A DNA stretch of 63,724 bases, counting the filler, from Octopus bimaculoides (taxonomy: Eukaryota): assembly GCF_001194135.2 (NCBI RefSeq). It is 5 parts of 5 records of this genome, joined end to end, with 100 filler letters (N's around TTAATTAATTAA, not from the genome) between each part and the next. Parts side by side here need not be neighbours in the genome. Positions count along the whole stretch, not along the records: positions 48,730 to 59,279 come from NC_068989.1; 4 more parts are not named here. One strand, written 5' to 3'. Made by a program: the position numbers and the translations under genes. Under the pieces are notes generated by a model, which did not search any database, was not told where the DNA came from, and saw only the letters and a list, made by a program, of their open reading frames with translations. This document shows positions 58,061-58,152 of this stretch, one piece after another (the first letter of the stretch is position 1; every line of letters begins with the position of its first letter).

Positions 58061-58152
58061 GCCCGCATAGCTCAGTCGGTAGAGCATCAGACTTTTATAG
58101 GTCAACCTTAGAAGTAATCTGAGGGTCGCGGGTTCGAGTCCCTCTGCGGGCG
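58061..58152 (+). tRNA. tRNA-Lys(UUU) with a 19-nt intron (58098-58116), copy E, apparently intact
   Basis: Acceptor GCCCGCA/TGCGGGC, D GCTC/GAGC, anticodon stem TCAGA/TCTGA, anticodon TTT 58094-58096, G73, intact A and B boxes; one C50.T64 mismatch. Confidence 0.9.

What the first reader, a model, noticed from the sequence alone, without database searches (positions are those of the whole stretch)
58061..58152. Intron-containing tRNA-Lys(UUU) with a canonical anticodon-intron helix
Seen: a 19-nt intron (TAGGTCAACCTTAGAAGTA) sits at the canonical 37/38 position. C32 pairs with the antepenultimate intron G (58114), and U33-U36 pair with AGAA, giving the A-I pair required by TSEN. A/B boxes and a T5 terminator are intact. 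Established: animal tRNA introns are mainly in Tyr-GUA, Leu-CAA, Ile-UAU and Arg-UCU; Lys-UUU introns are familiar from fungi. Inference: a lineage-specific intron gain or retention in a cephalopod Lys isodecoder.
Basis: partly seen in the sequence, partly recalled or inferred. Interest (0 to 1): 0.78.

Follow-up and report, generated by a model that had tools for sequence, protein, structure and literature searches.

The report
Intron-bearing lysine tRNA gene in octopus
This is a real, apparently intact lysine tRNA gene (anticodon UUU) interrupted by a standard 19-base tRNA intron; it is the best-kept copy in a decaying cluster of six such genes in an octopus-like genome, and the same intron-bearing gene type is common in marine environmental DNA, so it is a modest curiosity rather than a cephalopod novelty.

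Summary
Window 58061-58152 (+) is a 92-nt tRNA-Lys(UUU) gene: 73 nt of mature tRNA plus a 19-nt intron (58098-58116) at position 37/38. C32 pairs with intron G58114, the anticodon-intron helix is 6 bp, and the 3' splice site sits in a 3-nt bulge. A and B boxes and a T5 terminator are present. One T-stem mismatch (C50.U64) is the only blemish.

The other five are mutated or truncated. They arose by DNA-level duplication of units about 0.5-1 kb long.

A decayed LINE in the piece has named relatives only in Octopus, so "cephalopod" is reasonable.

"Lineage-specific" is not supported. One pattern scan found at least 120 metagenome contigs carrying Lys(UUU) genes with the same anticodon arm and a 37/38 intron:
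- 104 distinct introns, with G at intron position -3 in all 104.
- 66 distinct genes of metazoan type, some on contigs with animal-type genes.

Published surveys list animal tRNA introns as essentially Tyr, Ile, Leu-CAA and Arg-UCU. An animal Lys-UUU intron is therefore under-described, but it is an ordinary canonical intron. Function, meaning transcription and splicing, is inferred and not shown.

The parts
58061..58097 (+). 5' exon of tRNA-Lys(UUU), positions 1-37. Holds the A box (58068-58079) and the anticodon UUU (58094-58096).
58098..58116 (+). 19-nt canonical intron TAGGTCAACCTTAGAAGTA between positions 37 and 38. Bases 58109-58114 pair with A37-C32. The internal hairpin is AGG (58099-58101) with CCT (58106-58108).
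58117..58152 (+). 3' exon, positions 38-73. Holds the B box (58131-58141), the C50.U64 mismatch and discriminator G73.
58160..58164 (+). TTTTT, the likely Pol III terminator, 8 nt past the gene.
   Evidence: read from the sequence
58022..58043 (+). Upstream block TTTGCTTTTGTAGATAATATGA (-39 to -18). Its A/T-rich TAGATAATAT core is conserved in the paralogues. A role in TFIIIB positioning is inferred.
52899..52990 (-). Paralogue with an identical intron and 2 exon changes: G10T, in the A box and D stem, and C62T, in the B box and T stem. Rfam 43.7 bits.
50961..51052 (-). Paralogue with an identical intron and 4 exon changes: C32T, A43C, and two acceptor C-to-T changes. Rfam 49.5 bits; followed by a T13 run.
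49019..49110 (-). Degenerate paralogue with 6 exon and 7 intron changes. Rfam 29.1 bits, at threshold. The intron still has G at -3.
50073..50172 (-). Strongly degenerate intron-bearing paralogue, 83% identical over 101 nt. Not called as a tRNA.
   Evidence: (D8, D10)
59136..59200 (+). Truncated paralogue: 5' exon, intron and the first 9 nt of the 3' exon. The T arm and the acceptor 3' strand are lost.

Best explanation
Window 58061-58152 is an intact nuclear tRNA-Lys(UUU) gene of an octopus-like genome, carrying a canonical 19-nt intron at 37/38.

**How it most likely works (inferred from established tRNA biology).**
1. RNA polymerase III starts a few bases upstream. It is directed by the internal A and B boxes, possibly helped by the conserved A/T-rich block at about -29 to -18, and stops at the T5 run.
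2. The pre-tRNA folds into the cloverleaf, with the anticodon loop paired to the 3' part of the intron.
3. The tRNA splicing endonuclease (TSEN) places the 5' cut by distance from the mature body. It places the 3' cut in the 3-nt bulge set by the C32:G(-3) anticodon-intron pair.
4. RTCB-type ligase joins the halves into a 73-nt tRNA with loop CUUUUAA. The 19-nt intron is released, perhaps as a circle.

**Context (shown).**
- The gene is the best-preserved member of an old, decaying array of at least six paralogues made by DNA-level duplication of units about 0.5-1 kb long.
- All six carry the intron, so the intron predates the array.
- The intron-bearing state is shared with many metazoan-type Lys(UUU) genes in marine environmental DNA.

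**Conclusion (inferred).** The intron is probably inherited rather than a cephalopod invention.
For: **Gene and intron**
- tRNA calls and score.
- Exon and intron coordinates.
- Anticodon-intron helix and 3-nt bulge, in both the free and the cloverleaf-constrained fold.
- A box, B box and T5 terminator read.

**Intactness**
- The 58061 copy equals the consensus of the paralogues.
- Its 59.1 bits lie within the 52-62 bits of the environmental intron-bearing Lys(UUU) genes.
- The same C.U mismatch at 50:64 occurs in 3 environmental genes and the converse U.C in 8, so it looks tolerated.

**Array and intron history**
- All six copies carry the intron.
- Similarity extends 100-700 bp beyond the tRNA.
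- The intron shows 0/19 changes against flank identities of 0.83 and 0.72 in two paralogue pairs (P=0.03 and 0.002).

**Breadth**
- At least 120 metagenome contigs.
- 104 distinct introns of 10-32 nt, median 19. G at -3 in 104/104 and A at -4 in 81/104.
- Animal-type neighbours.

**Host:** Octopus LINE relatives.
Against: - No expression, Pol III occupancy or splicing data exist here.
- Five of the six copies are damaged, so the whole array could be dying.
- The intact copy has a C50.U64 mismatch and an unusual C6-G67 pair. Metazoan-type genes in the scan have G6.U67.
- The low divergence of the tRNA and intron could reflect gene conversion rather than selection.
- The third paralogue comparison shows no intron conservation (7/19 changes).
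- The phylum of the environmental contigs is not established. One protein search returned only unnamed hits.
- No sequence similarity between this intron and the environmental introns exceeds chance, so common descent of the intron is not shown.
Confidence: 0.7

Rival explanations
1. The whole cluster, including the 58061 copy, is a set of non-functional tRNA pseudogenes: a dying array. The organism's working Lys(UUU) tRNA is encoded elsewhere, possibly without an intron.
For: - Five of six copies are mutated or truncated.
- The best copy has a T-stem mismatch.
- Unit flanks are only 65-83% identical, so the array is old.
- SINE and LINE insertions and microsatellites fill the region.
Against: - The 58061 copy matches the family consensus, with no private defects.
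- A and B boxes, terminator and the upstream block are intact.
- The score equals that of environmental counterparts.
- The same 50:64 mismatch recurs in independent genes.
- The tRNA plus intron is far better conserved than the flanks.
Confidence: 0.2
2. The intron was gained recently and specifically in cephalopods.
For: - Published GtRNAdb surveys report introns essentially absent from metazoan tRNAs other than Tyr, Ile, Leu-CAA and Arg-UCU.
- The intron sequence has no detectable similarity to the environmental introns.
Against: - Intron-bearing Lys(UUU) genes with the same anticodon arm and a metazoan-type body are abundant in marine metagenomes. There are 66 distinct genes, some beside animal-type genes.
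- Within this genome the intron predates an array whose units have diverged by 17-35%.
- Short tRNA introns diverge too fast for lack of similarity to count.
Confidence: 0.08
3. The copies are a tRNA-derived SINE or other retroposed element rather than genes.
For: - There are multiple dispersed-looking copies on both strands.
- tRNA-derived SINE-like elements do occur in the same piece at about 55205-55600 and 56400-56820.
Against: - Similarity starts 100-450 bp upstream of the tRNA 5' end and continues downstream.
- There is no A-rich or LINE-like tail after the tRNA.
- Copy spacing is regular, about 0.9-1.1 kb or 1.94 kb.
- The intron is kept in every copy, which fits DNA-level duplication.
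Confidence: 0.02

Closest known systems
Canonical eukaryotic tRNA introns of animals (Tyr-GUA, Ile-UAU, Leu-CAA, Arg-UCU), cut by TSEN and joined by RTCB
   Same: - Position 37/38 and short length.
- The anticodon loop pairs with the intron.
- The conserved pair between nucleotide 32 and intron position -3.
- The 3' splice site lies in a 3-nt bulge.
   Different: The isoacceptor differs. Lys-UUU is not among the families that surveys list as intron-rich in animals. No intron-dependent modification is known for it.
Intron-containing tRNA-Lys(UUU) genes of budding yeast and other fungi
   Same: Same isoacceptor, same intron position, and the same need for the intron to pair with a CUUUU loop. 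That yeast tK(UUU) carries an intron is from my own knowledge. One search gives only "10 spliced tRNA families in yeast".
   Different: By my recollection the fungal tRNA body and anticodon stem differ. This gene has the animal-type TCAGA/TCTGA stem, so the fungal genes did not match the scan pattern. Homology of the introns was not tested.
Environmental metazoan-type intron-bearing Lys(UUU) genes
   Same: - Identical D-stem end, anticodon stem and loop, which the pattern required.
- G73, a GCCC... acceptor, and a 19-20 nt modal intron length.
- G at -3 and A at -4.
- T-run terminators and occurrence in tandem arrays.
- L092, L116 and L117 share the exact T arm, including the C.U mismatch.
   Different: - This gene's acceptor has C6-G67 and A7-U66 instead of G6.U67.
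- Its anticodon-intron helix is 6 bp, against 2 bp in most (42 of 66).
- Its intron sequence is unrelated.
Tandem tRNA gene arrays (Entamoeba; the 14 x 1054-bp array on contig CBDBEG010000035.1)
   Same: Head-to-tail repeated units about 1 kb long, each with one tRNA gene.
   Different: Here the array is old and broken. Units are 65-83% identical, lie on both strands, are invaded by SINE, LINE and microsatellite sequence, and most copies are degenerate.

Membership tests
Canonical eukaryotic tRNA intron (TSEN substrate) | Single intron located between nucleotides 37 and 38 | tested here: met
   The Rfam alignment places the insertion right after the anticodon loop's position 37. Removing 58098-58116 gives a 73-nt tRNA with the 7-nt loop CUUUUAA.
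Canonical eukaryotic tRNA intron (TSEN substrate) | Anticodon-intron (A-I) base pair between nucleotide 32 and the intron base 3 nt before the 3' splice site | tested here: met
   C32 pairs with G58114 in both the free and the constrained fold. G occupies this position in 104 of 104 distinct introns of related genes.
Canonical eukaryotic tRNA intron (TSEN substrate) | 3' splice site in a 3-nt bulge next to the anticodon stem, with the mature cloverleaf otherwise intact | tested here: met
   In the constrained fold U58115, A58116 and A38 are unpaired between the A-I helix and the anticodon stem. The cloverleaf is intact except for C50.U64.
Canonical eukaryotic tRNA intron (TSEN substrate) | Actually cleaved by TSEN and ligated in vivo | not testable with these tools
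   This needs tRNA-seq, a Northern blot or an in vitro TSEN assay.
Pol III type-2 (tRNA) gene | Internal A box and B box at standard positions, and a downstream T run of at least 4 | tested here: met
   TAGCTCAGTCGG at positions 8-19, GGTTCGAGTCC at positions 52-62, and TTTTT 8 nt downstream (read from the sequence). The consensus forms are from established knowledge.
Pol III type-2 (tRNA) gene | Pol III/TFIIIC occupancy and transcription | not testable with these tools
   No expression or ChIP data are available here.
tRNA-derived SINE | The repeat begins at the tRNA-like head and ends in a LINE-derived or A-rich tail, with dispersed copies and target-site duplications | tested here: not met
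   Paralogue similarity extends 100-450 bp upstream and about 100 bp downstream of the tRNA. There is no tail, and the spacing is regular.
tRNA pseudogene | Disabling changes in stems, boxes or terminator relative to the functional family | tested here: inconclusive
   The 58061 copy has only the C50.U64 mismatch, shared by the family and by 3 environmental genes. The other five copies do meet this definition.
Conserved metazoan intron-bearing tRNA families (Tyr, Ile-UAU, Leu-CAA, Arg-UCU) | The intron is present in that isoacceptor across animal phyla | tested here: inconclusive
   There are many metazoan-type intron-bearing Lys(UUU) genes in metagenomes, some beside animal-type genes. Their phyla were not identified, and no named animal genome other than this window was examined.

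The most novel reading that the evidence does not exclude
Lys-UUU may be a fifth, overlooked intron-bearing tRNA family in animals. On this reading it is kept across molluscs, annelids and other marine invertebrates. It would have been missed because tRNA databases are dominated by vertebrates, insects and nematodes. It might be retained because pairing the UUU anticodon with the intron is needed for some precursor-stage step, such as an intron-dependent modification or quality control.
Probability: 0.3. Interest if true: 0.6.

Novelty: new member of a known kind. Interest (0 to 1): 0.35.

Why it matters
Reviews and database surveys state that animal tRNA introns are confined to four families. 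Intron retention is usually explained by intron-dependent modifications of those particular anticodons. A canonical intron in Lys-UUU, if maintained in an octopus and widespread in marine invertebrate-type DNA, would add a case that this explanation does not yet cover. It would also give a simple comparative test of why tRNA introns persist. In practice, annotators of cephalopod genomes should expect intron-bearing Lys-TTT genes sitting in arrays full of pseudogene copies.

Tried and rejected
1. **Finding the window's own assembly.** Exact look-ups of three window ORFs found nothing on record.
2. **Sampling cephalopod DNA.** About 43 kb around LINE relatives (L129, which is GCA_001194135.2, and L130) held no tRNA genes. 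This is far too little to say anything.
3. **Taxon anchors for the environmental contigs.**
   - A GT92 gene on L025 had named relatives only in unionid bivalves, at 34% identity. This is a weak anchor.
   - Concatenated ORFs from L115 returned only unnamed metagenome proteins.
   - Accession prefixes were not found in the paper library.
   - My recollection is that the Ga0056xxx and Ga0126xxx samples are gutless-worm (annelid) host metagenomes. I could not verify this.
4. **Intron homology.** This intron is no more similar to the 64 environmental metazoan-type introns than its shuffles are (211 of 500 shuffles score as well). Single-linkage clustering of the introns over-chained and was dropped.
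5. **Literature.** Searches for Lys-UUU/TTT introns in molluscs, cephalopods or Lophotrochozoa found nothing specific. The PNAS survey's supplement is not held.
6. **Further array members.** A search at the positions where tRNA remnants would be expected (about 56230, 55100 and 52000) found none.
7. **Sub-threshold Rfam miRNA and snoRNA hits.** These all lie on microsatellites and were dismissed.
8. **ARAGORN mislabels.** It misreads the anticodon of many environmental genes whose intron starts with A. I defined those genes by the pattern instead.

Full report
**1. The observation**

The piece 48730-59279 was read and scanned.
- ARAGORN reports tRNA-Lys (ttt) at 58060-58153 (+).
- Rfam's tRNA model matches 58061-58152 end to end at 59.1 bits, E=5e-11. 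It places a 20-position insertion directly after the anticodon loop.

Splitting the sequence gives:
- a 37-nt 5' exon, 58061-58097;
- a 19-nt intron, TAGGTCAACCTTAGAAGTA, 58098-58116;
- a 36-nt 3' exon, 58117-58152.

The spliced product is a 73-nt tRNA with anticodon loop CUUUUAA and discriminator G73.

The free minimum-energy fold (-37.9 kcal/mol, z=-3.7, no shuffle as good) already pairs A31-A37 with U55-U49 of the precursor. With the cloverleaf enforced the energy is -35.9 kcal/mol. In that fold:
- the anticodon stem forms;
- C32-A37 pair with 58114-58109, including one G.U pair at U35;
- U58115, A58116 and A38 form the 3-nt bulge with the 3' splice site;
- U58098 bulges at the 5' splice site;
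- the rest of the intron is an AGG/CCU hairpin.

The one defect is a C50.U64 mismatch in the T stem.

**2. What surrounds it**

The gene is not alone. Rfam finds three more intron-bearing Lys(UUU) matches, all on the minus strand:

| Coordinates | Rfam score (bits) |
|---|---|
| 50961-51052 | 49.5 |
| 52899-52990 | 43.7 |
| 49019-49110 | 29.1 |

BLAST and repeat analysis add a very degenerate copy at 50073-50172 (-) and a truncated one at 59136-59200 (+). They also find a lone downstream-flank fragment at 54978-55071.

An alignment of all six shows that every copy carries the intron.
- 52899 has G10T and C62T.
- 50961 has C32T, A43C and two acceptor changes.
- 49019 has 6 exon and 7 intron changes.
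- 59136 has lost everything after ATCTGAGGG.

The 58061 copy equals the consensus. Similarity between copies extends 100-700 bp beyond the tRNA at 65-83% identity. Spacings are about 0.9-1.1 kb or 1.94 kb. This is therefore an old, DNA-level tandem or segmental array, present on both strands, and not retroposition.

The array is broken up by several other sequences:
- a tRNA-derived SINE-like element;
- a frameshifted LINE reverse transcriptase;
- microsatellites;
- an assembly gap flanked by a 100% identical 333-bp duplicate.

In two paralogue comparisons the intron has 0/19 changes while the flanks are 83% and 72% identical (P=0.03 and 0.002). The exons are likewise conserved. The third comparison shows no such excess. 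Constraint or gene conversion has kept the intron-bearing form.

**3. The organism**

The LINE remnant's only named relatives are proteins of Octopus bimaculoides and O. sinensis, at 63-83% identity. An octopod source is well supported. The species is not determined.

**4. Is the intron-bearing state special?**

[quoted passage not shown] I found no paper that mentions Lys-UUU introns in molluscs or cephalopods.

I then scanned public collections for GCATCAGACTTTTA-N(8-38)-ATCTGAGGGTC. This pattern is any Lys(UUU) gene with this anticodon arm and an insertion at 37/38.
- The prokaryote-genome collection gave one contig, labelled as a Rubritalea MAG. It carries 14 tandem 1054-bp units, each with such a gene, and is evidently eukaryotic contamination.
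- IMG/VR gave five contigs, two of them labelled GVMAG (giant-virus MAG), carrying a different body type with discriminator U73.

Across all hits:
- There are 110 distinct genes and 104 distinct introns of 10-32 nt, median 19.
- Intron position -3 is G in 104 of 104, and -4 is A in 81 of 104. The pattern does not force these positions. They are exactly the anticodon-intron pair that the TSEN literature calls the one conserved feature.
- Sixty-six distinct genes have the metazoan-type body: GCCCGG acceptor and G73. A T4 run follows within 40 nt in 93 of 95 occurrences.

Further properties of these genes:
- Their Rfam scores are 52-62 bits, the same range as the window's gene.
- They sit in typical nuclear tRNA clusters with intronless Lys-CTT, Gln, Glu, Pro, an intron-bearing Tyr, and a U3 snoRNA.
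- Neighbouring ORFs include a cyclin-dependent-kinase-inhibitor domain and an LRRNT+LRR_8 protein.
- A GT92 gene next to one of them has named relatives only in unionid bivalves, but at just 34% identity.
- Three genes (L092, L116, L117) have the same T arm as the window's gene, including the C.U mismatch. Eight others have U.C at the same pair.

The phyla behind these contigs were not established, because the last protein search returned only unnamed proteins. This intron also shows no sequence similarity to theirs beyond chance. The state is shared, but descent of the intron from a common ancestor is not demonstrated.

**5. Mechanism**

Shown:
- the gene structure;
- the Pol III signals;
- a fold compatible with TSEN recognition;
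- conservation of the intron-bearing form within the array.

Inferred from established tRNA biology:
- Pol III transcription from the A and B boxes to the T5 run;
- TSEN cleavage, with the 5' cut set by distance from the mature domain and the 3' cut set by the A-I pair and bulge;
- RTCB ligation;
- release of a 19-nt intron.

What the intron is for is unknown. By analogy with Tyr, Ile and Leu-CAA it could support a precursor-stage modification of the anticodon region, but nothing here tests that.

**6. Rivals**

- **Pseudogene array, about 0.2.** Five of six copies are damaged and the array is old. However, the 58061 copy has no private defect, and its only mismatch recurs in independent genes.
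- **Cephalopod-specific gain, about 0.08.** The environmental breadth and the intron's age within the array contradict it.
- **SINE, about 0.02.** The flanks fail the definition.

**7. Verdict**

This is a correct and careful observation of an ordinary canonical tRNA intron in an isoacceptor where animals are not usually said to have one. It is a new member of a known kind. The "lineage-specific" inference is not supported. The more interesting open possibility is the opposite one: that Lys-UUU introns are widespread in marine invertebrates and have simply gone unremarked. A tRNAscan-SE survey of named mollusc, annelid and other invertebrate genomes would settle this quickly. Interest is 0.35.

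Noticed in passing
window 55205-55600 and 56400-56820 (+): Two copies (85-92% identical) of a SINE-like element about 390 bp long. Its head resembles the 3' two-thirds of a tRNA (..CAGTGGTTAGGGCAGCGGATTCGCGGTCGTAGGATCGCGGTTTCGATTCCCAGACCGGGCG..). It is unrelated to the Lys gene and is inserted into the array.
   Followed up: partly
window 56572-56904 and 57059-57391, around the N run 56905-57058: A 333-bp stretch is repeated at 100% identity on both sides of a 154-N gap. This is almost certainly an assembly artefact, not biology.
   Followed up: partly
window about 53700-54630 (-): A frameshifted LINE reverse-transcriptase remnant spread over three frames, with a YSDD motif. Its named relatives are only Octopus bimaculoides and O. 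sinensis proteins (63-83% identity), which identifies the host lineage.
   Followed up: yes
window 52003-52178 and 52560-52670; also 48730-48825 and 54690-54750: Long (TAGA)n, (CA)n, (TA)n and (CATA)n microsatellites. They produce a crowd of sub-threshold Rfam miRNA and snoRNA hits that mean nothing.
   Followed up: yes
L121/L122 (contig CBDBEG010000035.1, labelled MAG: Rubritalea sp.): A 14.4-kb contig made of 14 head-to-tail 1054-bp units. Each unit has a metazoan-type intron-bearing tRNA-Lys(UUU) with a 19- or 20-nt intron variant. This is eukaryotic host DNA binned into a bacterial MAG.
   Followed up: partly
L123-L127 (IMG/VR; L126 and L127 labelled GVMAG) and L017, L023, L050, L078: Large virus-classified contigs, two labelled as giant-virus MAGs. 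They carry intron-bearing tRNA-Lys(UUU) genes of a different body type (GCCTT... acceptor, U73) with A/T-rich introns of 10-24 nt. G is also present at intron position -3.
   Followed up: no
L004, L009, L013, L027, L033, L042, L051, L089, L115 and others: In many environmental metazoan-type genes the 19-20 nt intron contains an inverted copy of the anticodon stem (..TCTGA...TCAG..). It can therefore fold on itself, or pair alternatively with either exon strand. This is unlike the window's intron.
   Followed up: no
window 58110-58140 region (T stem) and L001, L002, L022, L025, L092, L116, L117: A mismatch at T-stem pair 50:64 (C.U or U.C) recurs in intron-bearing Lys(UUU) genes from unrelated samples. 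This suggests it is tolerated or even characteristic, and not a sign of decay.
   Followed up: partly
window 58066-58067 and 58145-58146 (pairs 6:67 and 7:66): The octopus gene has C6-G67 where all metazoan-type environmental genes have the G6.U67 wobble. This is a compensated change in the acceptor stem and would serve as a tag for this gene's product in tRNA-seq.
   Followed up: no
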